A DNA stretch of 64,000 nt, taken from positions 124,001 through 188,000 of the IMG/VR virus record IMGVR_UViG_3300031997_000001. One strand, 5' to 3'. This document shows, in pieces, positions 9,588 to 50,189 of this stretch (position 1 is the stretch's first letter; every line of letters starts with the position of its first letter). The notes under the pieces were generated by a model, which did no database searches, had not been told where the DNA came from, and saw only the letters and a list, made by a program, of their open reading frames with translations. Position numbers and translations under genes: made by a program.

Positions 9588-9601
9588 GGACGTGAAATAC
9601 T

Positions 9602-10045
9602 CTATTCCATACTCTGGTCGACGAGCTTCTTCCACACGTTGCGGGCGATGTTCGGATCCATCAGGAAGTCCAGGATGTGCTTCTCATCCCTGTTGTCTAT
9701 GTCCTGGACCCTGAATGCCTTCTTGATGGCGAGCATGTCGAAGCGGTCTATCATCTCCTGCGTCTTTATCTTGCCGTTCGGGAGGACGATCTGGACGAAC
9801 TTCTTGATGCCGATCTTTCCTTCCTGCTCGTCCACTTTCATGCCGATCTTGAGCGTGCGCCTGCTTCCATCCAGACCCTGAAAGGCCAGCGTCGCGAACG
9901 GACTCCCGTCCTCGTCCTTCGAGTACTGCCAGTCAGGCCCGCGCCAGTCACCCTGTCCCTGGGTTTCTGGCTCAGTCTCTATCTGAGCTGCGATCTCTTC
10001 CGGGGTGGGCATTTTTTCTGCCATGGGTCCCTCGTGTTCTGTCAT
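9602..10045 (-). CDS. Hypothetical protein
   Basis: ORF with phage-like codon use. Confidence 0.65.
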   Translation of the reverse strand: MTEHEGPMAEKMPTPEEIAAQIETEPETQGQGDWRGPDWQYSKDEDGSPFATLAFQGLDGSRRTLKIGMKVDEQEGKIGIKKFVQIVLPNGKIKTQEMIDRFDMLAIKKAFRVQDIDNRDEKHILDFLMDPNIARNVWKKLVDQSME

Positions 10046-10138
10046 AGATTTGATCGTGCAAATCTACTATAAGATGAGCATAGGCCAGCAAATAGGGGCG
10101 ATTGGGGCGCTAGTATTTATAGCGATAGCGCTGTTTTT

Positions 10139-18501: not shown

Positions 18502-19561
18502 CTATGGTCTTTAAGGCCTCAGCCCAGGAACCTCTGATGGTAATCTTTCTGAGCGCATTAAATTCTGCCATCTGTCGGCTTATGGTCTGACGATCCACGG
18601 TCTCAAATTTGCTCTTCAGATCCGCAAACGATGAGAACTGCTGGACGTGAGGGAGCTGATAATAGTCATAATACTTCATCCAGGTCCTGATGCCCTTGAG
18701 ATTCGAGTAGTCGTTCGGGTCTGGCAAGTCCTGCCTGACGCCCTTGATGCGGGAGCCAGGTCCGAGCTTGAAGTATCCGTTCCACGTGAGCTCCGTCAGG
18801 ACGCCATGTCTCAGGGCTAGATCGAGCAGGAAATCTGGGGTCGGCACGTACAGCGGCACGTTCATCGAATAGTGCTCAAAGAACGACATGAGGGAACAGT
18901 TGTAAGGGATGTGTATCATGCCCGGATGCTTCACGAGATCCGACCACTGATACTTTCCGTAGGCTGACCGGACTGGCACAGCCCCCGTTGCCGCAGCGCA
19001 TTCTGCCACGGCCCCCGGGCCTCTGCAGTCCATAATGAGATTGCCTGCGCGTTCCGGCTTCCAGGTCACCCCGCAGTAATCGCACATGCTGGGGATGTAC
19101 AGCGGCCTGATCCCCGTAAAATAGTGGAAGTATTCCTGGTCATAAACGCTATTGGAGACGACCAGAAGCTTCCCGGCCGCATGCATCCTCTGGTAGAAGG
19201 CATTCAGGCGCTGCCAGCCAGCCGGATTATCATGGTAGGGATACTCGTACCGGATCGGCATGTATACGATGATGGGCTTGTTGAAGCGCTCGTAGATCTG
19301 GGCAAGAGATGGTGGGTAGGTAACGATGAAGCCATCAAAGCTGGCAAGCTGGTCCTTGCAGGCATTATAGAACTGATCCGCCGATACATCCCGCCAGGTC
19401 TGCGTGTTGACGGGGCCGAACCCAGCCGCCGGCGTCCTCCCCAGGACCCAGCTATGGCCGGACATATTGACAGAGACGACCTGATGCCCCAGGCTTTGGA
19501 GGGTCCTGGAAAGGTCCTCGATGACGGAGACGTGCATGTCGATGTTGAAGAACTTCATCAT
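18494..19561 (-). CDS. Glycosyltransferase-like protein
   Basis: HIPYNCSLMSFFEHYSMNVPLYVP GT-B-like C-domain; cluster context. Confidence 0.6.
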   Translation of the reverse strand: MMKFFNIDMHVSVIEDLSRTLQSLGHQVVSVNMSGHSWVLGRTPAAGFGPVNTQTWRDVSADQFYNACKDQLASFDGFIVTYPPSLAQIYERFNKPIIVYMPIRYEYPYHDNPAGWQRLNAFYQRMHAAGKLLVVSNSVYDQEYFHYFTGIRPLYIPSMCDYCGVTWKPERAGNLIMDCRGPGAVAECAAATGAVPVRSAYGKYQWSDLVKHPGMIHIPYNCSLMSFFEHYSMNVPLYVPTPDFLLDLALRHGVLTELTWNGYFKLGPGSRIKGVRQDLPDPNDYSNLKGIRTWMKYYDYYQLPHVQQFSSFADLKSKFETVDRQTISRQMAEFNALRKITIRGSWAEALKTIGG

Positions 19562-20247
19562 TTGAGCTTTTCTGCAAGGGGAAGTCCGCGCCGCCTATAA
19601 TATGTACCTCTATCCACGTCCGCAAGGGCCTTTGTCCGTTCGTCAAAGCCGTCTGCCGGACGCTTATTGGCAGCCCAATGGACGTGCTCGAACGTCGGCT
19701 GGTCCAGCCTTCTCAGGTTCTTCAAGAGGCCGAGCTCTGCCAGGACGTCATAGAGCTCTGTGTCCGAGAACATGTGGTGGTAGGCAGGATGGTAAATGAT
19801 CCGGTTCAGCCTTAACAGGCAGTTATATGTCATGATGGGGAGGGTCACGCTCGGTTCCGTCTGGTAGCCGTCGTTGACCAGCAGGCAGCCGTCGAATCCA
19901 TCAAAGTGCTTAGCCATCCAGGTGTTCCACGACTTGATCGGCCTGAAGTCGTCAGAAGCGAGGATGACGATGTCCTCCGGCTTAGCCTGGAAGGATTTTG
20001 CTAGGATGGAAGTCGGATACGTCGCACCCGATCGCGTGTTCCCGACGACTAGGACCTCGACGTTCGGCACGCCGACCAGCATGGAGAGAACTTCTGCCTT
20101 CTGCACGTCGACGTTTACGGCTATCTTGACGACGACGTTTTGGGGCTGGTCTGCCAGGTTTAGCCAGGAGCCAGGCGCCCGTTTCAGTGCATTGGCGCAC
20201 CAGTTTGGTCGGATCGTGGGCCAGAGGATGTACGCGTCCCTTGCCAT
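19558..20247 (-). CDS. GT-A-type glycosyltransferase-like protein
   Basis: WPTIRP; ASDDF; YHPAYHHMFSDTEL. Confidence 0.7.
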   Translation of the reverse strand: MARDAYILWPTIRPNWCANALKRAPGSWLNLADQPQNVVVKIAVNVDVQKAEVLSMLVGVPNVEVLVVGNTRSGATYPTSILAKSFQAKPEDIVILASDDFRPIKSWNTWMAKHFDGFDGCLLVNDGYQTEPSVTLPIMTYNCLLRLNRIIYHPAYHHMFSDTELYDVLAELGLLKNLRRLDQPTFEHVHWAANKRPADGFDERTKALADVDRGTYYRRRGLPLAEKLK

Positions 20248-20822
20248 TAGAATGCAGCCCCCGCGCATCGCAGGCCGCCCTGGGGGTTGCTGCGTGCCGT
20301 TACCAGGACCGCATTGAGCGTAGTGATCTGGTTCCCTTCCCGCCACCTGTTCGCGACTGCGATCTTGTCGAAGTACATCTGGTCGTGGCAATTGCAAGGG
20401 AGCCAGGTGGGAGTCACGAATTGACTGCGGACCATGACCTCAGGCGTCGCGAATGAGAAGTTCGTCTCTGCACCCGTCTGCATCCCGCAGTGTGCCATCA
20501 TGATGCCTGGATTCTGAAAGATTGCGTTGAACATCTCGAGGTACTTGGGGTGCATCACGTCGTCATCGTCGAAGAAGCAGGTCAGCTCACCTTTTATGTG
20601 CTGGACGCCGAAGTTTCGGGCATGGCTAGCGCCGCGCTTCTCGTTGTAGACGAAGTACTTGATTCTGGGATAAGGCTTTACGGCCTCATGGTAGTCGCTA
20701 CCAAAGTTGTCGACCAGGATGAGTTCCCAGTCCGCAAACGTCTGATTATGGATGTGGCATATGGTGTCGCCTATGATATGCTTGCGCTGGAACGTGGGCA
20801 TTATGATGGAAAACCGGGGCAT
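20247..20822 (-). CDS. Glycosyltransferase family 2
   Basis: SIIMPTFQR; ELILVDN; ARNFG; FFDDDD. Confidence 0.9.
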   Translation of the reverse strand: MPRFSIIMPTFQRKHIIGDTICHIHNQTFADWELILVDNFGSDYHEAVKPYPRIKYFVYNEKRGASHARNFGVQHIKGELTCFFDDDDVMHPKYLEMFNAIFQNPGIMMAHCGMQTGAETNFSFATPEVMVRSQFVTPTWLPCNCHDQMYFDKIAVANRWREGNQITTLNAVLVTARSNPQGGLRCAGAAF

Positions 20823-30613: not shown

Positions 30614-31783
30614 TCAGTCCTTGTAGGGGTCCTCTTCGTCCTCGCCTGCCATCGCTACGCCGATCGGCGAGAGCTTGTGCAGGATGCGGATCGAAGCCTC
30701 ATGGTGAGCGAGGACCTCGGACAGCCGCTTGTAGCAGTGGGGCGACTCGTCGGTCCCGGCCCCGCGGAGCTCCACGTTCTCCCTCTTCACCCACTCCGTC
30801 ATCATCTCCTTGGAGATCTTCCCGCCCACGCGGGGCTGTCCCCACTTCTTGCGCTTGCCCGCAGCCTCGTTGCGACCCATGACGCGGCCCGCGCCGTGGA
30901 CGGTGGAGTAGAGGGCGACCTTGCTCTCGTCGGAGTCTACGCCTTCCACGATGACGGAGCCGTCCCCCATGCTGCCACCGATGAAGCTCCTCTGGCCAGG
31001 GAACGCAGGCGTCGCGCCCTTGCGCACTACCCAAAGCGGTGCGCCGTCGTGCGTCTCCAGCCAGCTGAAGTTATGGTGGTTGTGGACCTCATCGATGATG
31101 TTGGCACCAAGGAGCGCAGCCACCTTGCCGCAGACCCAATCCCGGCCGGCGTAAGCGTAGCGGCCGGCGAGGCTCATGCAGACAAGATAGTCCTTGCCAA
31201 GCGCGGACTCGGCATCGAAGGTGACAGGCTCGACGTTGACGCCGTCCTTGCCGCCGCCTGCCTTGATGAAGTAGGTGGCGATCTTGTGGCCCAGGCCCCG
31301 TGAGCCGAAGTGGACGCCGATCCAGACGCGCCCCGCCTCGTCCTCGAAGAGGTCCACGAAGTGATTCCCCGAGCCGATCGTGCCGAGCTGTTCGCGGGCC
31401 AGGACCTTTAGGGTACTGACGGCTCCGACGTCCCAGGCTGGACTGTTAAAGAGCGGATGCTCGACCTCTTCCTTGTTCTTCCGGCCGATGCCGAAGGAAA
31501 GGCTGTGCCAGATGTCGTCCATAATCTTGGCGATGTTCTTCCGCACTTCCGCCACGGGGGCGTCGGTAAGAACAGCCTTGTTCCCGCAGGCGATGTCGTA
31601 CCCGACCCCGGACGGGCTGATGCGCCCGTGGTAGGCGACGACGCCGCCGATAGGCACGGCGTAGCCGAGATGATGGTCGGCCATAAGAGCCACGCGGGCA
31701 GCCGTGCGCTTGCACGTCCGCATCTGCTCCACCGCGTTGTCCTGCGGGACGCCCCAGACCGGAATGCCGTCGATCATCTGCAT
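30614..31783 (-). CDS. rtcB: RtcB family RNA ligase
   Basis: MADHHLGYAVPIGGV; GYDIACGN; GTIGSGNHF; HFGSRG; HNHHNF; HGAGR; DESPHCYK. Confidence 0.95.
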   Translation of the reverse strand: MQMIDGIPVWGVPQDNAVEQMRTCKRTAARVALMADHHLGYAVPIGGVVAYHGRISPSGVGYDIACGNKAVLTDAPVAEVRKNIAKIMDDIWHSLSFGIGRKNKEEVEHPLFNSPAWDVGAVSTLKVLAREQLGTIGSGNHFVDLFEDEAGRVWIGVHFGSRGLGHKIATYFIKAGGGKDGVNVEPVTFDAESALGKDYLVCMSLAGRYAYAGRDWVCGKVAALLGANIIDEVHNHHNFSWLETHDGAPLWVVRKGATPAFPGQRSFIGGSMGDGSVIVEGVDSDESKVALYSTVHGAGRVMGRNEAAGKRKKWGQPRVGGKISKEMMTEWVKRENVELRGAGTDESPHCYKRLSEVLAHHEASIRILHKLSPIGVAMAGEDEEDPYKD

Positions 31784-31793
31784 CTGGCTTCTC

Positions 31794-32129
31794 CTAGAGC
31801 TCTCTGCTCAGCGCATCCTTGAGGTGGAATTCGGTCTCCAGCAGGGCGCGCTCATTGAAGCCTGTATATGCCGAGACACGCTGGACCTCGATCGGAGCCT
31901 TGGCGACCTCAGACAGAAGAAGGAGTCCGTCCGGGCTCATCTCCAGCACCTTGCAGAGGAGGATCGTCATCTTGGCGAACGGGGGATTGCATTTCCCGTT
32001 CTCGATGCCAGACAGGTATCCCTTGCACGTTCCAGATCGCTCAGCAAGTCGCTCGAGCGTCATGCCCCTATGCTTCCTGATCTCATGGAGCACCTGGCCG
32101 AACCGCTTTCTGGCGCTGTTTTTCATCAC
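31794..32129 (-). CDS. XRE-family HTH regulator
   Basis: RGMTLERLAERSGTCKGYLSGIENGK. Confidence 0.85.
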   Translation of the reverse strand: MMKNSARKRFGQVLHEIRKHRGMTLERLAERSGTCKGYLSGIENGKCNPPFAKMTILLCKVLEMSPDGLLLLSEVAKAPIEVQRVSAYTGFNERALLETEFHLKDALSREL

Positions 32130-33300: not shown

Positions 33301-34431
33301 TTACCTGTCTTTCGGTTCCAACCATGAGATACCCAGCGCGTCCAGAATCTGCTTTTCGCTGTCCCTGGCAATTATGTTGCCCGCGACATCCGTGAGGCCG
33401 TAGCGCGTGAGATGAAGCCCCATCGTCTTGGCCTTGACCCGGCACTTGATGTTGAACTCGGCGCTTCCCGTAAAGAAGAGCAGCCCCGCTCCGTAGGCCA
33501 CCTTCGGGACGATCCGCAGGTCGACCTGGATGCCCTCCTTCACGATCGACGTAGCCTTCTCCCCGAGGTCCAGGTTCTTACCGAGCGTCCGACAGAACCG
33601 GGAATAAGCCACCTCGCCGTCGTCCCCGGCGATCAGGATGTCGATGTCCTTCGGATCCCTGCCGCGTCGAAGCGACCCGGCCACATCGATCCGTGCGTCG
33701 GGGAACTGCTTGCGCAGGGCCTCCACGATGGCGGTCGCCACGGACATTGCCTCGGCGTGCGGGAACCTCTTCTTGAGCTGGGTCTTCCCGCGCAGCTCCT
33801 CGAGCAGCGTCGTGGTCCCGGTCGCCCGCAGCTCGCCGATCGCCTTGGCGATCCCTTCCCCGATGCCGGAGACCTGAAGCAGCATGTTGCCGTCGTACTG
33901 CTCGAAACTGTCGAGCTCCTCGATCGCCTTGGCCGCGTTCTTGTAGGCCACGGCCTTGTACTGGTTCTCCCCTGCGATCTTCAGCCGCTCCGCCGTCTCC
34001 ACCAGCGCGGCTATGATCCCGGACCGCGGGAGCACGCTCTCGACGGTCGCCCCGGACGGAGGAACGTAAGGCTGGATGACCCAGCGGCTGCCGGATGCGA
34101 TGCTGGCCCGCTTGAGCGTCCACTGACCAGCAACCTTCCCCGAATCGACGCGGAAGCGGACCAGATCCGGCGTCCGCTCCTCGATCTCTAGCTCGCCCTT
34201 CTCCCAGATCTCTACGGTCCCCGCCCCGTAGCCCGCTGCGATCTCTCCCTCGAATCCCATCCAGGAGACGGGATGGTCTTCGGTCTGGATGGCCAGGCGG
34301 GATTTCTTGCTCTTGGCAGAGAAGCCCTTGGGGATCGCCCAAGACGGAGCCACCTCGCCCTCGACGAAGCGGAAGTCGTAATGCAGCCCGGCCTTCTTGG
34401 CCAGGTGCTTCTGAATCACAAATGGGGTCAT
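33301..34431 (-). CDS. LigD-type 3'-phosphoesterase fused to family X DNA polymerase
   Basis: FVIQKH..LHYDFRF..SWAIPKG..TEDHP..GYGAGTVEIWEKG, then HhH VSGIGEGIA, AGSLRR..DIDIL, QVDLR, FTGS..FN. Confidence 0.9.
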   Translation of the reverse strand: MTPFVIQKHLAKKAGLHYDFRFVEGEVAPSWAIPKGFSAKSKKSRLAIQTEDHPVSWMGFEGEIAAGYGAGTVEIWEKGELEIEERTPDLVRFRVDSGKVAGQWTLKRASIASGSRWVIQPYVPPSGATVESVLPRSGIIAALVETAERLKIAGENQYKAVAYKNAAKAIEELDSFEQYDGNMLLQVSGIGEGIAKAIGELRATGTTTLLEELRGKTQLKKRFPHAEAMSVATAIVEALRKQFPDARIDVAGSLRRGRDPKDIDILIAGDDGEVAYSRFCRTLGKNLDLGEKATSIVKEGIQVDLRIVPKVAYGAGLLFFTGSAEFNIKCRVKAKTMGLHLTRYGLTDVAGNIIARDSEKQILDALGISWLEPKDR

Positions 34432-37400
34432 GCCTCCTCCCCGTCGACCCTGATCTTGAGCGAGACCGGAGCGTCTTCAGATGCCAGGAAGGCCTGATAG
34501 TTCTGAAGCGTGGCCGTCGGCTCGAGCTCCTCCCGCAGCGAATCCCGGATCTCCTCGTACTTCTGCTTCTTGGCGATGGCATCCTGAATCCGGGGCAGGA
34601 ACGTCTCCTCGTAGAACTTCTGTCCCAGCCGCCTGATGATCTCCCGGTCGTACATCGCGTCCGTTTGCGGGATGCCGGAGAGCTCCTTCCATGCGAAGAG
34701 GCCCGGGATCATCTCACCCTTTGGCGCGGCCTTCTTGCACGCGCAGTGCTTGGCCGCCTCGACGGCAGGGGAGGGCTTGTTCTCCAGGGCTCCCCCTCCC
34801 ACCTTCAAACGCCTACCGCCGGCGACGTGCTTGGCCAGCCAGAGGGCGTCGCCCTTGGCGCGCGAGACGGGCATCCCCTTGCTGACGTTCTTGACGAAGT
34901 TGTACACCGCGAAGACGTCAAATCGGCGAAGCATGGGAACCTCCTAGATTTCGGCGTCCCGCTCGTCCTTCTTGGTGAAGAGCTTCCGCTTCTTGCGGGG
35001 AAGCTCCGCAGCGGGAAGGTTTTCCTCCTGCGGGAAATCCTTGGTATTGATCGCACCGGACGCATCCAGGGGATGCAAGCTCGAAGTGGCCTCGTGGGAG
35101 CACGAAGCCTCCGGCTTCTTGTCCAGATCGCCGGGCGTCTTGGCTCCGGGCCGGTCGACCAGCTTCTTGTGCTGGGCGTTCCACAGCATGCTGCCTGCAG
35201 CAGGGTGGGCCTTCATGGTCTTGATCTGCTCTTCCGCCCACTCGGTGGCGGAGACCGCACAGTTGTCTCTGTCCAGCAACGGGTAGAAGGTCCCGGCGTA
35301 AAGGTTGCCTTCCCAGTAGAGGGCCCATTTCTGTCCCTCGTACTGGACCAGCAGGCTGCCATCCTTGGAATGGCAGGCCGTCAGCTGAGGTTGCGTCCAG
35401 CTGGGCCAGTTGGCGTGCTCGACCGCGGGCCACGCAGTGATTTCAGGCATATGACCTCCTTGGGTGCTTTGTCGGCCTCACGCCAAAATCCGCACCGCTT
35501 GCAGGCATAGTATCCATCGGCGTTGATCTTGAGCTTCCGGCCGCAGTTGAAACAGCTTGCCTGCTTCTGCTCGGTCATAGGCTCATCTTCTTGACCCAGG
35601 CCTCAGCAGCCCGCCGGTTGGGGAACGACGCGTGCAATTCCCCGTCGGCCATGACGACAGCGGGCATCTCCGAACGGCCGCTGACTCGGATGGTGAACTT
35701 CGGGTGCCGGTACTTCGGGTGCGAGTACAGGACCTTGTGCGTCTTGGTATCGATGATCCTGACGATGCACTCGTCCATGATGGCTTGACCGCCTGTCGAC
35801 TTGGAATTGTGGATCATCAGCGGAACCTTGACCGGCCCCATGCTCCGTCCGACGGTCCCTTCGACATCATGCTCCTCCAGCCAGTCAAGCCCGGCCTTCT
35901 TGGTGTGGCCGTACCGGACACGGATGCGACGAGCGTGCGGCCAGACTCTGCAGTTTTCAAGGATCCTCACGACTTCGGGCGGCGTCCGGGGATCGTAGCT
36001 GGTTTCGATGGGTTTCATTTCAGGTTCCTGACTTTCCTCTTGGAAATGGCCATCTGGGCCACTAGCCTGCGACGTGCCTTGATATACCACCGATCAAGCG
36101 CCTTGAGCTTTTTCGCGTAGGTTGCCTGGAGCTCGCACTCAGCCCTGTTGAAGTGGCGCTCGATCGACCGCAACATCTCGGCCTTCGTGTTGTCCTTGGT
36201 CTTATCGAGCCTGTGCAGTTCCCAGCCGACCTTGTGGCACGGACACATGCAAGCCCACTCTTCGTGAGACGCCCAGAGCTTGAAGATCTGGTGTCCGCAC
36301 TCTAGGCATCTCTTTTGCCAGGCCTTCTTCATTTGGCCTCCTGAACCGCGACGCAGGCGACATAGACGACGTCGCGGTCCCGTTTCTTGAGACTGGTGAT
36401 GACCTCTTTGCAGGCCTGCGGGAACGCGCCGTCGCGATCTGCCTCCACGACCACCGCGCCCTTCTCGAGGACCGAGTCGTCGTCCTCGAGGCGGACCTCG
36501 TAGAGCACCTTGAACTTGCCCATGGTCTTCCTCCCCAGCTTGCACATGCGCTTGTACCAGTGCCACTCTTTCTCCAGCTGGATCAGTACGACGCCTAGCA
36601 CGACGCCCAGAAGGATGTCGAGTAAGTGTTCCATGGTGTCGGTGTCTCCTAGAAGTAATCGTCGAGTGTTGGAACGACCGAGAATCCCTTCTTCCGCAGC
36701 GTTGAGCAGACCCTCCCATACATGACGCAGGTCGCCTCGTCGTCGGTGTTGAGGCCTCCCCGCGAGTCCTGTCCGTCCTTGACTTCGACGTTCTCGACAT
36801 CCGTGTCGGCCGGGTCCTTGACCGGATCACGATCGGCAGTCCGGAACCCGCAGACCCACAGATGGTTGTCCCGCTTGGCCCCCTTCGCGGTCAATATCAG
36901 GTTCTCCGTGTCGACGTCCCCTCCCGGTTCCGAGACTTCGACCTTGGCGGCTAGAGGCTTTAGCAATTCGACGACGTCTTTCGTCTTCCAGTGCGTCACG
37001 TTCGCTCTCCTAGAAGTCCTCGATGCTGAGAATCCTGCTGCCCATGCTGCCAATGGCGTTGGGCGACTTGGCCAGCTTGTCTTCCGCGATCTTCCTGATG
37101 ATGGTCTGGCGCATCTCAGAGGAGAGCTTCACCAGTTTCACGGCAGCGGCGATTCCCACGTCGACGACGGTGAATTCCTCCACCCATGCGTCGCGAAGCG
37201 TCTCCCACTTCTTGTAGGCTTCCTTGTACTTGGCGCGACGCACCACCTTCGTGCCCTGGCTGACTCCCTGGAGGCTGATTATGTCCAGCGCAAAGTCCAT
37301 CTCCCTGGGTCGGTCGCCAGCGAAGGTGCACGCCAGTTGGACGACAGCGCTTTGCGCGGAAATCCTGCTGTCGTAGGGCCGCGCCTGCTCTATGTCGACG

Positions 37401-39595: not shown

Positions 39596-40702
39596 TTATT
39601 GTGAGCTGAGCCACCCACCCAGGGACTCTCCCCGGTTGCGGCGACGGCGAGAACTCAGGGACTTCTGGATCATCTGAGGCAGCTTCACGGACGCGGAATT
39701 GGCGATGATCCGAAGCGACGTCGCCTGGGCCAGCGCCACGTTCTCGTTGCCCACGACGCTACGCCACTGTCCTTCCTCTGATCCTTGCACCCAGACCCAC
39801 TCAGCCAGCGCCTTCACCTTGTGGGGGAAGGCGAAGCGCGTCTGCTTGCACTGGACGATCTGGGCGTACTCCTTTGACGGGTGCTTGCGGAAGACGCGGC
39901 CTCCCATCTGAATGGAAGGACCGCGGCCAGACGGACGAACGAACACGGTCTTGAGCGACGGGCAGTCGAAGCCTTCCGTCAGGATGAACACGTTGATGAG
40001 CACCGGGATCTCGCCCTTCTCGAACATCTCGAGCTGCGCATCCCGGTCCGTGTTGGCAGTGACCACTTCGGAGGCGACGCCCTTCTCCCACAGGAGGTTC
40101 TTCATCTGGTAGCACTCGTCCACCGAGAGGAAGAACACGAGCGTCTTGCCCCACTTCTCCTTCTCGCGCAGGTAGAAGTTGGAGACCGTCACCGGGTTGT
40201 ACTCGGGCATGACGAAGTGCTGGTAAGGCGCGAGGTAGCCCTGCTGGATCAGCACGTGAATGCCCGCGTCCTTGATGACCTTCTGGAAAGACAACTGCAT
40301 CCGGTCGGTCCGGAAGGGCGTGGCTGACAGGCCCAGGAACTTCTTGGGCTTCATCCGGTTCAGCAGGCTCACGCACGTTCCGCAGGCACTATGTTGGCAT
40401 TCGTCAAGAACGAGGAAGTCGCACGACGGGACTTCGTTCTGGAACAGCGAGATGTACTCGATGTCCTTGAGGCCGAAGAACTCCTCGTTCATGCCAGCGA
40501 CCTGCTTGAGCAGATTGCGACGCAGGGAAACCCAGCCGACCTTGAATCCCTGCTTCTGCATCTGGCGGGCAACTTCTAACCCGATGACACTTTTGCCGCT
40601 CCCCGTGGCCGACTCGACGAGCACCGATATGAGACCGCGGTCGTAAGCCTGGAGCGTCTTGCCGACGATCCGGCTCTGGTACGGCCTCTGTTCAAGGGGC
40701 AT
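39596..40702 (-). CDS. SF2 DEAD/DEAH-box helicase
   Basis: RPYQ; SATGSGKS; LDECQH; GLSATP; TEGFDCP; QMGGRVFR. Confidence 0.9.
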   Translation of the reverse strand: MPLEQRPYQSRIVGKTLQAYDRGLISVLVESATGSGKSVIGLEVARQMQKQGFKVGWVSLRRNLLKQVAGMNEEFFGLKDIEYISLFQNEVPSCDFLVLDECQHSACGTCVSLLNRMKPKKFLGLSATPFRTDRMQLSFQKVIKDAGIHVLIQQGYLAPYQHFVMPEYNPVTVSNFYLREKEKWGKTLVFFLSVDECYQMKNLLWEKGVASEVVTANTDRDAQLEMFEKGEIPVLINVFILTEGFDCPSLKTVFVRPSGRGPSIQMGGRVFRKHPSKEYAQIVQCKQTRFAFPHKVKALAEWVWVQGSEEGQWRSVVGNENVALAQATSLRIIANSASVKLPQMIQKSLSSRRRRNRGESLGGWLSSQ

Positions 40703-40729
40703 AGATTTCCTCCGCCTCCTCATCGGGGG

Positions 40730-40759
40730 ATGGTAGCATGTGGAGGGATTGAACGTCAA
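40730..40759 (-). promoter_or_regulatory. sigma70-like promoter for helicase
   Basis: TTGACG-18-TACCAT with TG extension. Confidence 0.6.
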
Positions 40760-44535: not shown

Positions 44536-45300
44536 CTAGATGTCCAGAACCCTGGACCCGAGGTTGCCGAACTTCTGCAGGACCTGCTTGGACGCGCCGG
44601 TCTCGGCTTCCAGCGAACCCCAGTCGAAGTTGCTGGACGTCGTCGACGGACCGTCGTCGTCTCCCAGCCTGCGCCCACCCAGGTCGCCGAACTTCTTGAG
44701 GGCGGCGATGACGGAAGCGGCGATCCGCTTGAGCACCATCCGCACGCCGGCGACCAGCTTGTTCTCCACGTCCCATCGGCGGTCGAAGGCCATCGTTCCG
44801 CCGGCCTTGCTCTCGGCGATGGACTTGAGCTGCCAGGCCTGGTCCTTGTTGATGACCAGGTGGGTGACGTCCTTGGACCAGGAGTTCATGACCTCGGCGT
44901 AGACGAACTTGTTGGCGTCGTAGTTCTGCAGGATCTTGAGGGTGCCCGCGTCCACCTGGGGACCGAAGGGCTTCTTCTTCGACAGCTGCAGGTCGACGAA
45001 CTCGAAGCGGGCGATCTTGTACTGGTGGCCCAGCGTCTTAGCCACCTCTTCCTCCTGACGGAGCTCGCCGATCTGGGTCTCGACGTACTGACCCTCCTTA
45101 CGCGGCCGGAGCTTGTCCTTGAGCTTCTTGGCCAGGAACTCATCCAGCTCGGACTCCGTGGCGAAGTCCAGGACCTGTTCCGCGGACGATCCGCCGACGC
45201 GTCCCCATGAGAGGGTCAGCTTGAGCCCGTCCCTCTCGGTTTTGTAAAACTTGTTGTGTTGTGCGCTTTTGCACAGGTAGTACTTCACTTCTTTCGCCAT
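44536..45300 (-). CDS. WGR-domain protein
   Basis: HNKFY...LSWGRVG..Q; C-terminal FGxLGxR repeats. Confidence 0.8.
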   Translation of the reverse strand: MAKEVKYYLCKSAQHNKFYKTERDGLKLTLSWGRVGGSSAEQVLDFATESELDEFLAKKLKDKLRPRKEGQYVETQIGELRQEEEVAKTLGHQYKIARFEFVDLQLSKKKPFGPQVDAGTLKILQNYDANKFVYAEVMNSWSKDVTHLVINKDQAWQLKSIAESKAGGTMAFDRRWDVENKLVAGVRMVLKRIAASVIAALKKFGDLGGRRLGDDDGPSTTSSNFDWGSLEAETGASKQVLQKFGNLGSRVLDI

Positions 45301-45375
45301 GGGTTGCACTCCAGAGGAGGCTGAAGAAGTAGACAGTCATAGCTGCGGTCAGGGCCAGAGCGAACTCGGGAGCCA

Positions 45376-46568
45376 TCAGTGGATGGCGACCTCGACTGCG
45401 CGATTGCCGATGAGCTGCTTGTCGACTAGCATGGCGAAGACCTTCCCGGCTGCCTTCCCTTCCGTCTTGCCGTAGTGACGCTGCATCCCCTCGACCCCGA
45501 CCGTGGGATGGATGTGCAACCAGGCTACCCATTTGCCCGGCTTGTCCATGGACTCCTGCACCCGGATGAGGATTCTGTCTTTCTCTTTCTTCATCCCTCG
45601 TTCTCCTTGTTGAACTTCTCGATCGCCTTGGCCAGCTGCTCGGCGGCGGGGCCGAAGACGTACTCGTGGGACGCGTTCTCCTCGTCGACGAAATAGCCAG
45701 CGATGTAGGGTGCGATGGACAGGAGACCGAAGCTCATCGGAGCGATCCAGATTTCCCCATGGGCGTCGTAGCCCTTGGGCTTGCGGAACTTCTCGCCCTC
45801 GCCGGAGTAGAGCGTGCTGCCGTCCAGCTGCTTCCAGCCGTGCTTGATCAGCCATTCGCTGAGCGTCTCGCCCATATCAAGCCTCCTAGGTAAGGAACTT
45901 CTTGAGATCCGGCCGGAGCGTCTTAGCCTCCCTGATCTGGTTCCAGATGAACAGCCTCCGGAGCGGGACCGTGAATCCTCCCTTGCGGATCCTGTAGCGC
46001 TTGTCCAGCCAGGCCTTGAGCGTGGGATACTTCCCCTTTTCCCCGCGCCATGAGACGCCGCAGATCCCGTCGTCCGTGATGATCCCGTTGAACTTGAACG
46101 CCAGGTCGTTGATGAAGCAACCCTCGACCCAGGAGTCCAGATCTCCCATAGAGCCGTGCCGGATCTCGATCTTGTGCGAGCTCCCGAGCCAGATGGGGTG
46201 GGCGTGATCCTTCCACATGATGATCCCGCACCCGCCAGGACCCCAGCCGTCCCATCCCTTCTCGACCTTGACCTGGCCGCCGAATCGAGCCTTGCTGATC
46301 TCCGTCAGGGCGTCAAACAACTTGTCGCCTGTCAGCTTGTGGTGGGTCGTGATGTAGCCGTGGTTGGCCATCAAGCCTCCTAGTTGCAGACCGTGAAGTC
46401 CTTGACCTTCTTGTTCTTGCGCAGGGCCTCGCGGACGGCATCGATCACAAGGGGTCGAAGCTCGTCCTTCGGGAGGCCCTCGACGTCGATGATGAAGTCG
46501 TCCTTCGGGCCTTCGCCCAGCGAAATAGAGACGGAATTCATGAAGCCGCGATGGGGTTTCTTGCTCAT
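45376..46568 (-). other. Four small hypothetical genes (45376-45594, 45591-45875, 45886-46374, 46380-46568)
   Basis: Tiled ORFs with SD. Confidence 0.6.
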
Positions 46569-47413
46569 TTCAGCCACTCCTTGAACTGGTCGTAGGTGAC
46601 CACGTCCAGCCCGAGTTCCATGGCAGCCATTGCCTTGTTACTGCCGGTGCCGAGCGCCTTGACGATCAGGTGCGTGCAGTTCTTGGACACGCTGCTCCTG
46701 ACGACGCCGCCCAGGGACTCGAACTTCTCCTGCTCGGCTCCCGTGGGCCGGACCCCCGTAAAGACGATGGCCCGACCGGCCAGCTTGCCGCCCGTTGCCA
46801 CGGGCTTCGCCTTCTCGGCCTTCGCAATCTTGACGACCTTGAGCAGCTTCTTGATGAGCGGCAGGTTGGCCTCCACGCCGGCGGCCACGCCCTCCCGGAT
46901 GGCAGGTCCGAGAGTTTGGCACTTGCGGATGAATGCCGGATCCGAGAACTTCTCGGTCGTGTCCAGCCCGTTGTCCTCCACCATGTGCTTCGCGGCCCGG
47001 GTGCCCAGAAAGCGAACACCCAAAGATCCAAAAAATTCGTGAAGCTGGAGTTCCTGGGTCTTTCCGATCTCGTCCAGGATCTGCTTGGCGCGATCCTCGC
47101 CGAGTCGACCATTGCCCACTTTGAGATCTGCCAACTGCTTTTGGGTGAGCGCGTAAAGATCAGCGGGATCGCGGACCAATTCGCTATCCCACAGGGCGAG
47201 CTCAACCTCATCTCCCAAGAATTTGATATTCAGCGATTTTCTCCAGCGACGGACCTTCCTGATCAGACGCCCTTCGCATTCCTCATTCTGACAGAAGAGG
47301 GCTGGCCCGACACGCACAAGCTTGGACTTGCAAGCGGGGCATGAAGTAGGGATGGCGATGGGCTTGTCAAGCCGCTCGAGCTCGACCATCTTACCCTTGC
47401 ATTTGATTTGCAT
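46565..47413 (-). CDS. ligA: NAD-dependent DNA ligase C-terminal half (Zn finger, HhH, BRCT)
   Basis: PTSCPAC..FCQNEEC; LNIKFLG; DPADLY; LGVRFLG; IVFTG..GGVVRSSVSKNCTHLI; own GGAG SD. Confidence 0.85.
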   Translation of the reverse strand: MQIKCKGKMVELERLDKPIAIPTSCPACKSKLVRVGPALFCQNEECEGRLIRKVRRWRKSLNIKFLGDEVELALWDSELVRDPADLYALTQKQLADLKVGNGRLGEDRAKQILDEIGKTQELQLHEFFGSLGVRFLGTRAAKHMVEDNGLDTTEKFSDPAFIRKCQTLGPAIREGVAAGVEANLPLIKKLLKVVKIAKAEKAKPVATGGKLAGRAIVFTGVRPTGAEQEKFESLGGVVRSSVSKNCTHLIVKALGTGSNKAMAAMELGLDVVTYDQFKEWLK

Positions 47414-47451
47414 GAGGAATTGCTCCAGTATGTTAAAGGCAAACATAAAAC

Positions 47452-48312
47452 ATGAACATAATAACAGAATACAAGCAGGGATTGTCCAGTCTTATGCTTG
47501 CGCGCAAATATGGCATTCCAAAGTGCGCAGTTCTGCGGATTCTTGCAAAAGCTGGCGTTGAACGGCGCTCGCTTTCTGTCGCACTTAGAAAGTATGCCAT
47601 AGATGAGACTTTCTTCGATCGGATCGACAACGAACGGAAAGCGTATTGGCTCGGGTTCTTATTAGCTGATGGACACATACGCCATTCGGGTCGTTTCAAC
47701 AGGAGCGGGTCTGTAAGGGTGGCACTACAAGGGCGAGATGTGGCGCACCTTGAAATGCTCAAATCACACATAGGCAGCCAAAAGCCGATCAAGCTCACCA
47801 CCACAAATGCGGGGCACCCGTGTTGCATGCTTGATCTTCACTCTACGAGACTCGCGAACGTCCTGCTGTCTGCTGGCTGGACTGAGTTTAAAGAGAAAGG
47901 CGACTGCCGCATTTTAAGCACAGTACCGTTACGGTTGCGGCGACATCTCGTACGCGGCCTTGTAGACGGCGATGGTCACTTTCGGAGTTCTCCGGCTTAC
48001 AGGTGGAGAAACGGCAGGGTGTCGTACCAGCTCCATTTTGAGTTTGTCGACCTCCACCTTCCTATCGTTCAATGGGTCCAGCAGTACCTCGTGCGGCATT
48101 GTGCCATGCACCGCACAAAGGTATATCATCCATCAAAAGCTTACACGATCCGTTACGGTGGTAAGCAGGTCACGCGTATTTTGCGCCACCTCTACGCTAG
48201 CGCACACGTCGCACTTGAGCGGAAGGTAATTAAAGCACATGCTTTGCTTTCTGCTGCGTCTCCGTCCCCACAAATCCGCAGCCGGAGCACCGATAAGTCG
48301 GCTCCGCTTTGA
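47452..48312 (+). mobile_element. LAGLIDADG homing endonuclease gene, antisense inside ligA
   Basis: N-terminal HTH; KAYWLGFLLADGH and HLVRGLVDGDG motifs; LERK; atypical codon use. Confidence 0.85.
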
Positions 48313-49381
48313 TGCACTTCGGCACAACATCCCCAGCCCTGATGATGGCCACAGTCGATCCGAGCCTGGCCCCGAGGCGTTCGATCTCCTCCACGTTGTT
48401 GAGGAGTACGTTCGAGATGATCACGCCTCCGATTCCGACGGGCTTGACCTTTCCGGTCGGAATTATGGCCCCTGTATGTCCAATGGTGAAGATCACGTCC
48501 TCGAGAACGGTCTCCGCCCCGAGCGCCTCCCACTTGTACGCCCGCTGTCCCTTCGGCCGGTCGTCCGAGACGCCCATCGCCTCGGAAGCCGCGCAGTCGT
48601 TGAGCTTGACGACGATCCCGTCGACCTCGAAGGGCAGCTTCTCCCGCGCCTGGCCCATCGCCTCGTGCGCCTTCTCGACGTTCTCCAGCTTGGTCAGCTT
48701 CTGCATCAGGTGGACCTGGAACCCGCAGCTCTCCAGGAACTGGAGCTTCTGGAGCTCGGTGCCCACGATCAGCAGGTCAGACTCCGTGCCGACGACGTCG
48801 TACGGCAGGACGCGCAGATGCTCGCATCCGGCCCCGTCCTTGGACCGCATGACCCCGTTGCCCTGGTTGCGCGGGTTGGAGCCATCCGGCCAGTACTTCT
48901 TGAAGTCCTCCTTGTACAGCAGACACTCCCCGCGGATGAACCCGGTGAACGGGGTAGGGAGCTGCTTGATGATATGCGTGGACCTGAGGATGTTGACCGT
49001 CACGTCCTCCCCGACCTTCCCGTCGCCTCGGGAGACCGCCCGGACCAGCTTCCCCTTCTTGTACTCCAGGGAGAGCGAGCAGCCATCATACTTCCACTGG
49101 ACCACGACTTCCTTGACGGGGAGCTTGTCCCACCACTTCCCCAGCTCCTCGAGCGTCTTGACCTTCTCCTGGGAGCCCATCGCTATGGCGTGCTTGACCG
49201 GCTTGAAGAGGGAGCCAGCCGGCGGGGCGCCGACCGTCTTGAGGAAGTCGTTCTTGGGGTCCAGCTCCCGAAGCTGGTCGACCAGCGCGTCGAACTCGGC
49301 GTCCGTCAAGAGAGAGACGCCGGTGTTGTAATAGGCCTCGGAGGCGGCCTTCAGCTGGGCGACGATCGCGGTGATGCTCAT
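48230..49381 (-). CDS. ligA: NAD-dependent DNA ligase N-terminal half (adenylation + OB)
   Basis: YYN..DAEFD; KYDG; RGDGKVGEDVT; RGE; NPRN; DGIVVK; AYKW; RAGDVVP. Confidence 0.9.
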   Translation of the reverse strand: MSITAIVAQLKAASEAYYNTGVSLLTDAEFDALVDQLRELDPKNDFLKTVGAPPAGSLFKPVKHAIAMGSQEKVKTLEELGKWWDKLPVKEVVVQWKYDGCSLSLEYKKGKLVRAVSRGDGKVGEDVTVNILRSTHIIKQLPTPFTGFIRGECLLYKEDFKKYWPDGSNPRNQGNGVMRSKDGAGCEHLRVLPYDVVGTESDLLIVGTELQKLQFLESCGFQVHLMQKLTKLENVEKAHEAMGQAREKLPFEVDGIVVKLNDCAASEAMGVSDDRPKGQRAYKWEALGAETVLEDVIFTIGHTGAIIPTGKVKPVGIGGVIISNVLLNNVEEIERLGARLGSTVAIIRAGDVVPKCIKAEPTYRCSGCGFVGTETQQKAKHVL

Positions 49382-49569
49382 GCCAGTGTCTCCAATTCCC
49401 GACGCAGTTCCGTCTCCCCCATGTACTGAATGTTGGAGAGGTAGGAGTACAGCTCATCGTCGCTCAGCCCATCCCTGTTCGGCTTATAGTGCTCGGTCAG
49501 GAGCTTCCGGACCTCGGTGATGTCCAGTTCCTTCTGGGCCAGAAGCTGCTTCGCCTGATCGCTGGTCAT
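49378..49569 (-). CDS. Hypothetical protein
   Basis: SD GGAGG, coupled. Confidence 0.6.
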   Translation of the reverse strand: MTSDQAKQLLAQKELDITEVRKLLTEHYKPNRDGLSDDELYSYLSNIQYMGETELRRELETLA

Positions 49570-50189
49570 CAGTCCTCCTTCGTCTTGAGATCCTCGTCCG
49601 GGACGATGGTCCGGGTCATTCCAGATAATCCATCTCTCCACTTGAGCTTGAACATGGCCGGGTTGTCGACCGACTTATGGAAATCGCCGACCAGCTTCGA
49701 GCCGAGGCGCTTGAGCACGATCCCCTCGGTCTTCATGTCGCCGATGAGGGACTTGTAGAGCGCGGCGTAGCCCGTGGTCTGACCAGGAATGAGATGGATC
49801 GGCCATCTGGCACCGTCCACTCTGATTCCGTTGTAGATCCCGAACACCTTCGCGTACCGCTCCTCGACGGGGAGATGACCGACCCACTCGCCCCTCTCGT
49901 ACATCATGTCGAAGAGCCACATTCCCTCTTCCTTCCACGCCTCACGCCGGCAGGTCCACTCGGCGTTCAGGACCGTGCCATCCTCGAGCGGCAGGAGTTT
50001 GAGGGCATCTCTCATGTCGTCCGAGATGGCGAGCGGCTTCATCACGCGGGAGAGGACGACCAGTTCGCCCTTCTCTCGGAAGATCAGGGAGTTGTGTCCA
50101 TCGAGCTTCGGCTGGGCGACGTATTCGCCCTCCTTGATCATCTTCAAGGAATAGATGTGAGACGGTTTGTCAGGAAATCTGGGCTTGAT
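49569..50189 (-). CDS. Minimal ATP-dependent ligase-like nucleotidyltransferase, probable ATC start
   Basis: QPKLDG; NAEW; LFDM; EGIVLKR; FKLK; no OB domain. Confidence 0.75.
   Translation of the reverse strand: MKPRFPDKPSHIYSLKMIKEGEYVAQPKLDGHNSLIFREKGELVVLSRVMKPLAISDDMRDALKLLPLEDGTVLNAEWTCRREAWKEEGMWLFDMMYERGEWVGHLPVEERYAKVFGIYNGIRVDGARWPIHLIPGQTTGYAALYKSLIGDMKTEGIVLKRLGSKLVGDFHKSVDNPAMFKLKWRDGLSGMTRTIVPDEDLKTKED

What the first reader, a model, noticed from the sequence alone, without database searches (positions are those of the whole stretch)
33301..34431. LigD phosphoesterase fused to a trimmed PolX
Seen: a complete PE motif set, then the PolX lyase/HhH domain joined almost directly to palm and thumb; the second HhH (fingers) and the PHP domain are missing. 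Established: PE normally occurs in LigD or alone, and bacterial PolX usually carries a PHP domain for 3' end processing. Inference: PE replaces PHP, giving one enzyme that heals 3'-phosphate ends and fills gaps, e.g. after restriction or CRISPR cuts.
Basis: partly seen in the sequence, partly recalled or inferred. Interest (0 to 1): 0.65.

Follow-up and report, generated by a model that had tools for sequence, protein, structure and literature searches.

The report
Phage 3'-end-healing enzyme fused to mini-PolX
A 235-kb phage encodes one protein that joins a LigD-type 3'-phosphoesterase to a shortened family-X DNA polymerase. It is a rare, undescribed fusion that probably cleans blocked 3' DNA ends and then fills the gap.

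Summary
The ORF at 33301-34431 (minus strand, 376 aa) is real. It reads LigD_N phosphoesterase (PE, aa 7-108), PolX 8-kDa HhH domain (138-206), palm (222-286) and C-terminal nucleotide-binding subdomain (317-376). [quoted passage not shown] The AlphaFold model is confident (pLDDT 93).

- The PE site keeps five of six essential residues. The Tyr88 position is Trp57 here and Tyr in relatives.
- The 8-kDa domain lacks the Pol beta Lys72 lyase nucleophile (Ala197) and most pocket lysines.

The polymerase motifs are intact.

The window lies in a 97%-complete IMG/VR virus record. The fusion recurs in independent contigs at 98%, 57% and 55% identity, so it is not a misassembly. Other PE+PolX fusions with different layouts fall in separate PolX clades (AU test p=0.003), which indicates recurrent fusion. 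The architecture is rare and I found no paper on it.

Most likely it is a bifunctional enzyme for 3'-end healing and gap filling, sealed in trans by phage ligases. It is a functional analogue of PolX-PHP and of the PE+POL modules of LigD. Repair of restriction or CRISPR cuts is unsupported.

The parts
33301..34431 (-). Whole PE-PolX gene, 376 aa plus a TAA stop. Its start ATG overlaps the stop of the upstream gene (ATGA).
34069..34431 (-). LigD-type 3'-phosphoesterase (PE) beta-barrel, aa 1-121. Active-site positions are Q7, H9, H17, D19, R21, K35, R45, E51 and H53, with W57 in place of the canonical Tyr.
   Evidence: Pfam PF13298 E 4e-25. TIGR02777 E 2.5e-28, below its cut-off. PDB sequence matches 3P4H, 3P43 and 3N9B with residue mapping. 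All-beta model for residues 2-121.
34027..34068 (-). Linker, aa 122-135, between PE and the 8-kDa domain.
   Evidence: No secondary structure and a dip in pLDDT to 82-84 in the model.
33781..34026 (-). PolX 8-kDa N-terminal domain with HhH1 (G189-I-G191), aa 136-217. The K159 and Y163 positions are kept; the Lys72 position is A197.
   Evidence: Pfam HHH_8 E 1e-10. Alignments to rat Pol beta 13-90 and D. radiodurans PolX. Column table.
33760..33780 (-). Junction, aa 218-224, where canonical PolX has the ~60-65-aa DNA-binding subdomain with HhH2. Pfam calls that subdomain 'fingers' (PF10391); the Beard-Wilson nomenclature calls it 'thumb' or D-subdomain.
   Evidence: 5 residues here against 56-69 in full-core PolX
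33508..33759 (-). Palm, aa 225-308. It carries G252-S-L-R-R256 and the catalytic residues D262, D264 and D304.
   Evidence: Pfam palm and NTP_transf_2. Alignment to ttPolX. Invariant columns.
33304..33507 (-). C-terminal nucleotide-binding subdomain (Pfam 'thumb'), aa 309-376. It carries F319-F-T-G-S-A-E-F-N327 and R331.
   Evidence: Pfam PF14791 E 4e-16. Alignment to Pol beta 254-333.
34428..34934 (-). Upstream 168-aa ORF of unknown function. It is the only neighbour conserved with PE-PolX in the 55%-identical phages. A role as a partner is only a hypothesis.
   Evidence: tblastn synteny. Alignment A3. No Pfam, PHROG, NCBIfam, PADLOC or Atlas match.
48230..49381 (-). NAD+-dependent DNA ligase, N-terminal piece (Ia, adenylation and OB domains). 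Inferred candidate for sealing in trans.
46565..47446 (-). NAD+-dependent DNA ligase, C-terminal piece (ends in BRCT). It is separated from the N-terminal piece by about 780 bp.
   Evidence: The ligase is an intact 654-aa frame in relative G001.
49569..50147 (-). ATP-dependent-ligase-like nucleotidyltransferase domain standing alone, with motif I KLDG and no OB domain. Inferred second candidate for sealing.
   Evidence: A homologue sits upstream of LigA in G001.

Best explanation
The gene encodes a bifunctional phage DNA-repair enzyme.

The proposed mechanism has three steps:
1. The N-terminal LigD-type PE domain, a Mn2+-dependent 3'-phosphomonoesterase/3'-phosphodiesterase, converts a blocked 3' end into a 3'-OH. 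The blocked end would be a 3'-phosphate, or possibly a 3'-terminal ribonucleotide.
2. The tethered minimal PolX (8-kDa domain, palm and nucleotide-binding subdomain) extends that 3'-OH by template-directed filling of a short gap.
3. A separate ligase seals the nick. The candidates are the phage's NAD+-dependent LigA and the adjacent ATP-ligase-like NTase-only protein.

The enzyme works like bacterial PolX-PHP, with PE doing the 3'-cleaning job of PHP. It also works like the PE+POL modules of LigD, with PolX in place of the AEP polymerase. Because the Pol beta Lys72 position is not conserved, it probably has no canonical dRP-lyase activity. It would therefore suit gaps whose 5' side is already a clean phosphate.

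What is shown: domain identity, the intact polymerase motifs, five of six PE catalytic residues, the deletion, and the recurrence of the fusion. What is inferred: all enzymatic activities, the order of steps, the ligase partner and the natural substrate.
For: - Domain calls and E-values, PDB sequence matches to ttPolX, Pol beta and three PE structures, and a confident model whose best structural matches are PolX enzymes.
- The polymerase catalytic set is intact and invariant across the clade: GSLRR, D262/D264/D304, FFTGS..N327 and R331. Inactive 'noncanonical' PolX have lost these residues (PMC9226535).
- PE metal ligands H9/H17/D19 and phosphate ligands R21/H53 are conserved in every fused homologue.
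- The fusion is under selection. It is kept at 98%, 57% and 55% identity in independent assemblies, including 234-kb and 253-kb contigs.
- PE and PolX are fused in at least three PolX lineages with different layouts: P0006 (PE + full core), P0130/P0129 (PE + palm + C-terminal subdomain, with no 8-kDa domain detected) and P0132 (PolX upstream, PE at the C-terminus). See; the AU test rejects a single clade, p=0.003.
- Ligases are present and syntenic in both diverged phages.
- PHP of bacterial PolX has 3'-phosphatase/3'-phosphodiesterase activity (PMC6616362 abstract). PE activities and essential residues are given in PMC3300020 and PMC8656161.
Against: - No activity has been measured.
- The Tyr88 position, whose mutation inactivates P. 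aeruginosa PE (PMC8656161), is Trp57 here. Trp also occurs in a stand-alone PE (P0250), and relatives keep Tyr.
- The lysine-rich 5'-phosphate/dRP pocket of the 8-kDa domain is largely lost, so gap recognition may differ from that of Pol beta.
- The HhH2 DNA-binding subdomain is absent, and DNA binding is untested.
- The phage encodes no recognisable ExoIII, EndoIV, UDG, Fpg/Nei or HhH-GPD glycosylase. The source of the 3'-blocked gaps is therefore unknown.
- RtcB lies four genes downstream, which could point to RNA ends rather than DNA ends. RtcB is absent from the 55% relative, which is an 89%-complete record.
Confidence: 0.6

Rival explanations
1. LigD-style 'ribo-patch' repair. The PolX domain preferentially adds ribonucleotides at breaks or gaps, for example when dNTPs are scarce. 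PE then acts mainly as the 3'-ribonuclease that trims the tract to one ribonucleotide before sealing, as the PE and POL domains of LigD do.
For: - PE's best-known partner is an rNTP-using polymerase in LigD (PMC3300020 introduction).
- The steric-gate motif is FF here rather than the usual YF or HF (frequencies in PMC9226535).
- An ATP-ligase-like NTase with weak NHEJ-ligase similarity is encoded nearby.
Against: - Phe keeps the bulk of Tyr at the gate position.
- Nothing in the sequence shows rNTP preference.
- There is no Ku.
- The NTase-only protein lacks an OB domain, and its activity is unknown.
Confidence: 0.15
2. The PE domain is catalytically impaired in this phage (Trp at the Tyr88 position). 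It would serve mainly as a primer-end or DNA-binding module for a PolX that lost its HhH2 subdomain.
For: - The Tyr88 position is Trp57, and Tyr88 mutants of PaePE are inactive.
- PE binds primer-template 3' ends (PMC3300020).
- The subdomain that normally holds the primer strand is missing.
Against: - All other catalytic residues are strictly kept, and relatives keep Tyr.
- Stand-alone PolX with the same deletion exist without PE and branch around the fused clade. PE is therefore not needed to compensate for the deletion.
Confidence: 0.1
3. RNA repair. PE heals 2',3'-cyclic or 3'-phosphate RNA ends, for example on tRNAs cut by host anticodon nucleases, in concert with the neighbouring RtcB. 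The PolX part would act as a nucleotidyltransferase on RNA.
For: - RtcB is at 30614-31783 on the same strand, four genes downstream.
- PE acts on ribonucleotide 3' ends.
- An RNA-ligase-like Pfam hit to the NTase-only protein, below the cut-off.
Against: - RtcB ligates 3'-P/2',3'-cyclic-P ends directly (textbook knowledge), so removing the phosphate would work against it.
- RtcB is absent from the 55% relative that keeps PE-PolX.
- The PolX part has the full DNA-polymerase motif set and an 8-kDa HhH domain.
Confidence: 0.08
4. The junction is an assembly or gene-calling artefact that joins two separate genes.
For: None found. The only related observation is that gene callers truncated the PE part in P0004 and P0005.
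Against: - The same continuous frame is found in the window, L009, L010, L001/L002, the P0003 cluster and, more distantly, P0006. These come from different samples and sources.
- The model is confident across the linker.
Confidence: 0.01

Closest known systems
Bacterial/archaeal PolX with C-terminal PHP domain (T. thermophilus PolX, PDB 3AU2/3B0X; B. subtilis PolX)
   Same: This is the best sequence match for the polymerase part (E 2.5e-27). It has the 8-kDa domain, palm, nucleotide-binding subdomain and the same catalytic motifs. Both join a gap-filling polymerase in one chain to a 3'-end-cleaning phosphoesterase.
   Different: The 3'-cleaning module here is an N-terminal PE beta-barrel, not a C-terminal PHP. 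The HhH2 DNA-binding subdomain (ttPolX ~89-153) is deleted. No 3'-5' exonuclease or AP-endonuclease activity is expected from PE.
LigD and stand-alone PE enzymes (P. aeruginosa PE 3N9B; Ca. Korarchaeum PE 3P4H; M. barkeri PE 3P43)
   Same: PE domain homology (E 1e-19 to 1e-24), with five of six essential residues. As in LigD, PE is paired with a repair polymerase.
   Different: The polymerase is family X rather than an archaeo-eukaryotic primase-type POL. There is no ligase domain in cis and no Ku in the genome. The Tyr88 position is Trp. A 2-residue insert lies between the two His ligands, shared with other metagenomic and viral PEs.
African swine fever virus Pol X (174 aa minimal PolX)
   Same: A viral PolX trimmed of the HhH2 DNA-binding subdomain. 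From the literature as I recall it, palm plus the C-terminal subdomain suffice for gap filling. It appears as a weak structural match (rank 28).
   Different: ASFV Pol X also lacks the 8-kDa domain and has no PE. Here the 8-kDa domain is kept and PE is added.
Stand-alone PolX without the HhH2 subdomain, ~233-274 aa (e.g. P0123; Vibrio phage 2.275.O NVP2275O_117, annotated 'hypothetical protein')
   Same: [quoted passage not shown] End-to-end alignment with aa 143-376.
   Different: No PE domain. Most keep the Lys72 position, which the window protein has lost.
Phaeocystis globosa virus PolX-ligase fusion ('Swiss army knife', PMC5537341)
   Same: A viral PolX fused to another repair activity to compress a repair pathway into one protein (abstract).
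   Different: The partner there is a C-terminal ligase-like domain and the core is Pol beta-like. Here the partner is an N-terminal PE and the ligases are separate genes.
Mammalian PNKP 3'-phosphatase + Pol beta in NEIL-initiated, APE1-independent BER (functional analogy, from general knowledge)
   Same: The same proposed chemistry: remove a 3'-phosphate, fill a 1-nt gap, and need no dRP lyase.
   Different: The phosphatase fold is unrelated (HAD in PNKP against the PE barrel). These are separate proteins. No phage glycosylase was found.

Membership tests
LigD 3'-phosphoesterase (PE) superfamily, PF13298 | Sequence and fold: an eight-stranded beta-barrel matching the family profile | tested here: met
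   PF13298 88.4 bits against a cut-off of 31.1. PDB matches to 3P4H, 3P43, 5DMP and 3N9B. All-beta model for aa 2-121, pLDDT ~90+.
LigD 3'-phosphoesterase (PE) superfamily, PF13298 | Mn2+ ligands His42, His48 and Asp50 (PaePE numbering) | tested here: met
   H9, H17 and D19 by alignment to 3N9B. Conserved in all fused homologues.
LigD 3'-phosphoesterase (PE) superfamily, PF13298 | Phosphate ligands Arg52, His84 and Tyr88 | tested here: not met
   R21 and H53 are present, but the Tyr88 position is W57. It is Tyr in P0003, L001 and P0006, and Trp also in stand-alone PE P0250. This is one substitution, not loss of the site.
LigD 3'-phosphoesterase (PE) superfamily, PF13298 | Mn2+-dependent 3'-phosphatase and 3'-ribonucleoside resection activity | not testable with these tools
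   Needs a biochemical assay.
Family X DNA polymerase (PolX core) | Palm with GS-x-RR and three catalytic Asp | tested here: met
   G252-S-L-R-R256 and D262/D264/D304 aligned to ttPolX. Invariant in A1 and A2.
Family X DNA polymerase (PolX core) | C-terminal dNTP-binding subdomain with the YFTGS...N...R motif | tested here: met
   PF14791 59 bits against a cut-off of 25. F319-FTGSAEFN327 and R331. The first residue is Phe instead of Tyr or His.
Family X DNA polymerase (PolX core) | 8-kDa N-terminal domain with HhH1 | tested here: met
   PF14716 42.3 bits against a cut-off of 30. Alignment to Pol beta 13-90 and DrPolX 10-91.
Family X DNA polymerase (PolX core) | DNA-binding subdomain with HhH2 (PF10391; Pol beta ~91-148) | tested here: not met
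   No PF10391 hit. 5 residues here against 56-69 in canonical cores. A gap of about 64 columns.
Family X DNA polymerase (PolX core) | dRP-lyase nucleophile (Pol beta Lys72) and lysine pocket (Lys35/60/68/84) | tested here: not met
   K72->A197, K60->L185, K68->G193, K84->L209. Only the K35 position (K159) and the Y39 position (Y163) are kept. Most other PolX in the set keep Lys at the K72 position.
Bacterial/archaeal PolX (PolX1: core + PHP) | C-terminal PHP phosphoesterase domain | tested here: not met
   The protein ends at the polymerase C-terminus (aa 376) and has no PF02811 hit. NF006375 scores 99.9 bits against a cut-off of 426.
LigD (multidomain NHEJ ligase) | ATP-dependent ligase domain and AEP-type POL domain in the same protein, with Ku in the genome | tested here: not met
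   No PF01068 or PF21686 in the protein. No Ku in the 97%-complete genome. No PF01068 match reached threshold in the genome.

The most novel reading that the evidence does not exclude
PE-PolX would be the core of a Ku-independent, phage-encoded break-healing kit. The other members would be the conserved upstream 168-aa protein, the NTase-only ATP-ligase-like protein and LigA. The kit would restore phage DNA carrying 3'-phosphate or ribonucleotide-terminated ends, such as those produced by host defence nucleases or by synthesis under dNTP-depletion defences. It would then be a counter-defence repair pathway assembled convergently with LigD, with PolX in place of the AEP polymerase.
Probability: 0.12. 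Interest if true: 0.75.

Novelty: new variant of a known kind. Interest (0 to 1): 0.5.

Why it matters
Both domains are well known, but the combination is not described in the papers I could search. It is also very rare among PE and PolX proteins.

Evolution has joined PE to PolX at least three times, in different domain orders. That is strong comparative evidence that 3'-end healing by PE and gap filling by PolX work together. It parallels the PE+POL pairing in LigD and the PolX+PHP pairing in bacteria.

It offers enzymologists several things:
- A compact (376 aa) two-activity repair enzyme to test.
- A natural experiment on what PolX can do without its HhH2 subdomain and without the lyase lysine.
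- A pointer to an unstudied repair capacity in jumbo phages.

It also flags a family of ~250-aa PolX proteins lacking the HhH2 subdomain. One sits in a cultured jumbo phage and is currently annotated as hypothetical.

Tried and rejected
- Complex prediction of PE-PolX with the conserved upstream 168-aa protein gave no answer (score 0.02; the partner's fold was uncertain). This is neither for nor against binding.
- The ESM Atlas look-up of the 168-aa protein gave no usable hit.
- PHROGs has no family for PE-PolX. PADLOC has no hit for it or its neighbours.
- I looked for a complete phage BER pathway. ExoIII, EndoIV, UDG, Fpg/Nei and HhH-GPD are all absent.
- I looked for NHEJ partners. There is no Ku and no canonical ATP ligase.
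- I tested whether RtcB is an obligate partner. It is absent from the 55% relative.
- I tested TAG recoding by comparing ORF totals. The apparent gain is confounded by antisense frames of GC3-rich genes, so I draw no conclusion and used only table 11.
I could not examine docking between the PE and PolX active sites.
Full report
**1. What is there**

The finding's coordinates match an intact ORF on the minus strand, 33301-34431, 376 aa. It has the GC3-rich codon pattern of the real genes of this region (GC3 0.85) and a TAA stop. Its ATG overlaps the stop of the upstream gene (ATGA).

| Pfam domain | Residues | E-value |
|---|---|---|
| LigD_N (PE) | 7-108 | 4e-25 |
| HHH_8 (PolX 8-kDa domain) | 138-206 | 1e-10 |
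| DNA_pol_B_palm | 222-286 | 4.5e-6 |
| DNA_pol_B_thumb | 317-376 | 4e-16 |

There is no PF10391 ('fingers') and no PHP hit. NCBIfam agrees: the LigD PE domain model and the PolX model both match, each far below its full-length cut-off. The overlapping ORFs on the other strand and in other frames have no family hits and the antisense composition pattern.

**2. The deletion**

Nomenclature first. The missing piece is the DNA-binding subdomain with the second HhH, Pol beta ~91-148. Pfam and older papers call it 'fingers'. The Beard-Wilson convention calls it 'thumb' or D-subdomain. I call it the HhH2 subdomain.

- Against T. thermophilus PolX, aa 151-217 align to residues 18-88 and aa 219-374 to 154-312, so about 65 residues are skipped.
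- Against rat Pol beta, aa 137-215 align to 13-90 and aa 302-376 to 254-333.
- MAFFT with two full-core relatives shows one clean gap of about 64 columns.
- In a 46-sequence alignment the window protein has 5 residues where canonical cores have 56-69.
- An AlphaFold2 model built on that alignment is confident: mean pLDDT 93.1, pTM 0.73. It shows a beta-barrel (aa 2-121), a short linker, then the 8-kDa helices (136-216) leading directly into the first palm helix (225-242).
- Its best structural matches are ttPolX, Pol lambda and Pol beta.

**3. Active sites**

*Polymerase.* G252-S-L-R-R256, D262, D264, D304, F319-FTGSAEFN327 and R331 are all present. They are invariant or nearly so across homologues. 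This is unlike the inactive 'noncanonical' PolX described in PMC9226535.

*PE.* The table maps residues through the HMMER alignment to P. aeruginosa PE (3N9B; chain index plus 16 gives the published numbering).

| Window residue | PaePE residue |
|---|---|
| Q7 | Gln40 |
| H9 | His42 |
| H17 | His48 |
| D19 | Asp50 |
| R21 | Arg52 |
| K35 | Lys66 |
| R45 | Arg76 |
| E51 | Glu82 |
| H53 | His84 |
| W57 | Tyr88 |

His42, His48, Asp50, Arg52, His84 and Tyr88 are the residues needed for both PE activities (PMC3300020). Tyr88 mutants are inactive (PMC8656161). The site is therefore five-sixths canonical in this phage. The 55-57% relatives and P0006 keep Tyr, and Trp also occurs in a stand-alone PE.

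*8-kDa domain.* The Lys35 and Tyr39 positions are kept (K159, Y163). The Lys60, Lys68, Lys72 and Lys84 positions are L185, G193, A197 and L209. Most other PolX in my set keep Lys at the Lys72 position, including most stand-alone forms with the same deletion. In the fused clade it is A, T or K, with K or R at the preceding position. Canonical dRP-lyase chemistry is therefore unlikely here.

**4. Where it lives**

The window is bases 124001-188000 of a 235,458-bp IMG/VR virus record that CheckV rates 97% complete.

Neighbours on the same strand:
- RtcB (30614-31783) and an HTH protein.
- An SF2 helicase (39596-40759).
- A WGR-domain protein (44536-45309).
- An AAA ATPase.
- A NAD+-dependent DNA ligase in two pieces.
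- A 192-aa protein that is an ATP-ligase nucleotidyltransferase domain on its own. It has KLDG motif I and an AF2 model at pLDDT 89.8. Foldseek matches to the ASFV, archaeal and human ligase NTase domains give TM by query of 0.6-0.67.

The genome has no Ku, ExoIII, EndoIV, UDG, Fpg/Nei or HhH-GPD, and no ATP-ligase family match at threshold.

**5. Relatives**

The same fused frame occurs in:
- a 46.5-kb contig (98% identity);
- a 234-kb IMG/VR contig and a 253-kb ENA contig (55%);
- a cluster of short contigs (57%).

In two database entries the gene caller started at an internal Met and lost most of the PE. The upstream frame in L001 is open and encodes the full PE. Misassembly is therefore excluded.

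Only the upstream 168-aa ORF is syntenic across the 55% divergence. The LigA and NTase-only pair is also conserved about 15 kb away in the 234-kb relative. RtcB is not.

**6. How common is the architecture**

- The exhaustive HMMER search of 1.84 billion representatives gave 11,636 hits. Among the 150 best, five cluster representatives combine PE and PolX:
  - P0005, the window's own clade;
  - P0006 (PE + full PolX core, 421 aa);
  - P0130 and P0129 (PE + palm + C-terminal subdomain, no 8-kDa domain detected);
  - P0132 (1326 aa, PolX upstream, PE near the C-terminus, 23 members from marine samples).
- Among the best 120 PE proteins of similar length, only the window's twin has PolX domains.
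- In IMG/VR, only two of the 80 PolX-encoding loci kept (of 238 found) carry the fusion. None of the other fetched loci has a separate PE.
- Fold searches of BFVD and of the ESM Atlas's large clusters found no full-length match.
- Three literature searches found no description. Two recent surveys of prokaryotic PolX do not mention it in the passages I searched.

**7. Order of events**

I built a quick IQ-TREE tree of 66 palm + C-terminal cores.
- PolX lacking the HhH2 subdomain form a starred clade (SH-aLRT 96).
- The fused clade (95) is nested inside it, next to the stand-alone P0123 (97).
- P0006 pairs with a PE-less full core (98).
- P0130, P0129 and P0132 form a third clade (99).
- An AU test rejects a tree that holds all PE-fused cores together (p=0.003).

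Loss of the HhH2 subdomain most likely came before PE was added in this lineage, and PE has been joined to PolX, or lost from it, several times. Two caveats apply. The tree is unrooted and from a quick search. I also named the group after seeing the tree, although it is defined by architecture.

A stand-alone example of the same deletion exists in a cultured jumbo phage, Vibrio phage 2.275.O NVP2275O_117. It is 254 aa, annotated hypothetical, and aligns end to end with aa 143-376.

**8. Mechanism**

The most economical reading is a two-step healer-filler. PE turns a blocked 3' end into 3'-OH, the tethered PolX fills the short gap, and a separate ligase seals. This is what PolX-PHP does in bacteria: PHP has 3'-phosphatase and 3'-phosphodiesterase activities (PMC6616362 abstract). 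It is also what the PE and POL modules do within LigD.

The missing lyase lysine fits substrates with a clean 5'-phosphate. Examples are gaps left by beta,delta-elimination or by oxidative strand breaks. That is general knowledge applied by inference, not shown here.

ASFV Pol X is the literature precedent, as I recall it, that palm plus the C-terminal subdomain can fill gaps without the HhH2 subdomain.

The rivals are ribonucleotide-patch repair, a catalytically weakened PE that serves as a DNA-end clamp, and RNA repair with RtcB. They are weighed in their own sections, and none is excluded by sequence alone.

There is no Ku and no link to defence systems. By general knowledge such cuts do not need a 3'-phosphatase.

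**9. Verdict**

This is a real, intact, selected gene. It is a new variant of known kinds, rare and apparently undescribed, with a clear and testable function. The two corrections are Trp at the Tyr88 position and the absence of the lyase lysine.

**Limits**
- No access to model coordinates.
- The complex prediction gave no answer.
- The amber-suppressor tRNA raises a genetic-code question that I did not resolve. I used only table 11, under which this ORF is open and ends at TAA.

Noticed in passing
window 4871-4944 (+): A tRNA with a CUA anticodon (amber suppressor; ARAGORN labels it tRNA-Pyl). It matches Rfam tRNA at 70 bits. My ORF-length test for TAG recoding was confounded by antisense frames, so whether TAG is read through in some genes remains open.
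   Followed up: partly
window 46565-47446 (-) and 48230-49381 (-), with the insert at 47447-48229: The NAD+-dependent DNA ligase is split into an N-terminal piece (Ia, adenylation, OB; 383 aa) and a C-terminal piece (ends in BRCT; 293 aa) by about 780 bp. The insert holds small ORFs (131 and 66 aa); the 131-aa one, which I scanned, has no Pfam hit. The 55% relative has one intact 654-aa frame. This could be an intron, a homing element or a truly split ligase.
   Followed up: partly
window 49569-50147 (-); the frame stays open upstream to at least 50270: A ~190-210-aa protein that is only the nucleotidyltransferase domain of an ATP-dependent DNA ligase. It has motif I KLDG and lacks an OB domain. 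It lies directly upstream of LigA, and a homologue holds the same position in the 234-kb relative. Homologues start about 17 residues earlier than the first ATG/GTG/TTG here, so the start codon is unclear.
   Followed up: yes
window 30614-31783 (-) and 31794-32129 (-): An RtcB RNA ligase (Pfam E 1.6e-63; phrog_1075) follows an HTH-domain gene, four genes downstream of PE-PolX. It is present in the 98% relative and absent from the 55% relative.
   Followed up: partly
window 34428-35450 (-): Two 168-aa ORFs of unknown function lie in the same frame, separated only by a TAG and three codons. Read-through of TAG would give one 341-aa product. Only the downstream one is conserved next to PE-PolX in the 55% relatives.
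   Followed up: partly
window 44536-45309 (-): A 257-aa protein with an N-terminal WGR domain (E 2.6e-7). WGR is the domain found in PARP-type DNA-break sensors. The rest of the protein is unassigned.
   Followed up: no
L096 2710-3474 (Vibrio phage 2.275.O, NVP2275O_117); also P0123, P0125, P0127, P0128, P0133, P0142 and P0261: A family of ~233-274-aa stand-alone PolX proteins (8-kDa domain, palm and C-terminal subdomain) lacking the HhH2 subdomain. They have the same deletion boundary as the window protein. One sits in a cultured 349-kb phage, annotated 'hypothetical protein'.
   Followed up: yes
P0132 (1326 aa, 23 cluster members, contigs up to 142 kb) and P0224 (369 aa): Other unusual PE fusions in metagenomes. 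One is a very large marine protein with a PolX palm and C-terminal subdomain at 454-606, DUF5872 at 800-873 and PE at 1148-1247. The other joins PE to a 2H/LigT-type phosphoesterase.
   Followed up: partly
L001 9662-10963 against called gene 10001-10963: Gene callers started the relative's PE-PolX at an internal Met, cutting off most of the PE domain. P0126 looks like the detached PE of the P0004 lineage followed by out-of-frame sequence. Precomputed domain architectures therefore under-count this fusion.
   Followed up: yes
window 8640-9635 (-) and 19558-20397 (-); L001 6705-7574 and 8378-9091: Glycosyltransferase-like genes in the window and two radical-SAM genes just upstream of PE-PolX in the 55% relative. 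These may hint at DNA or surface modification functions.
   Followed up: no
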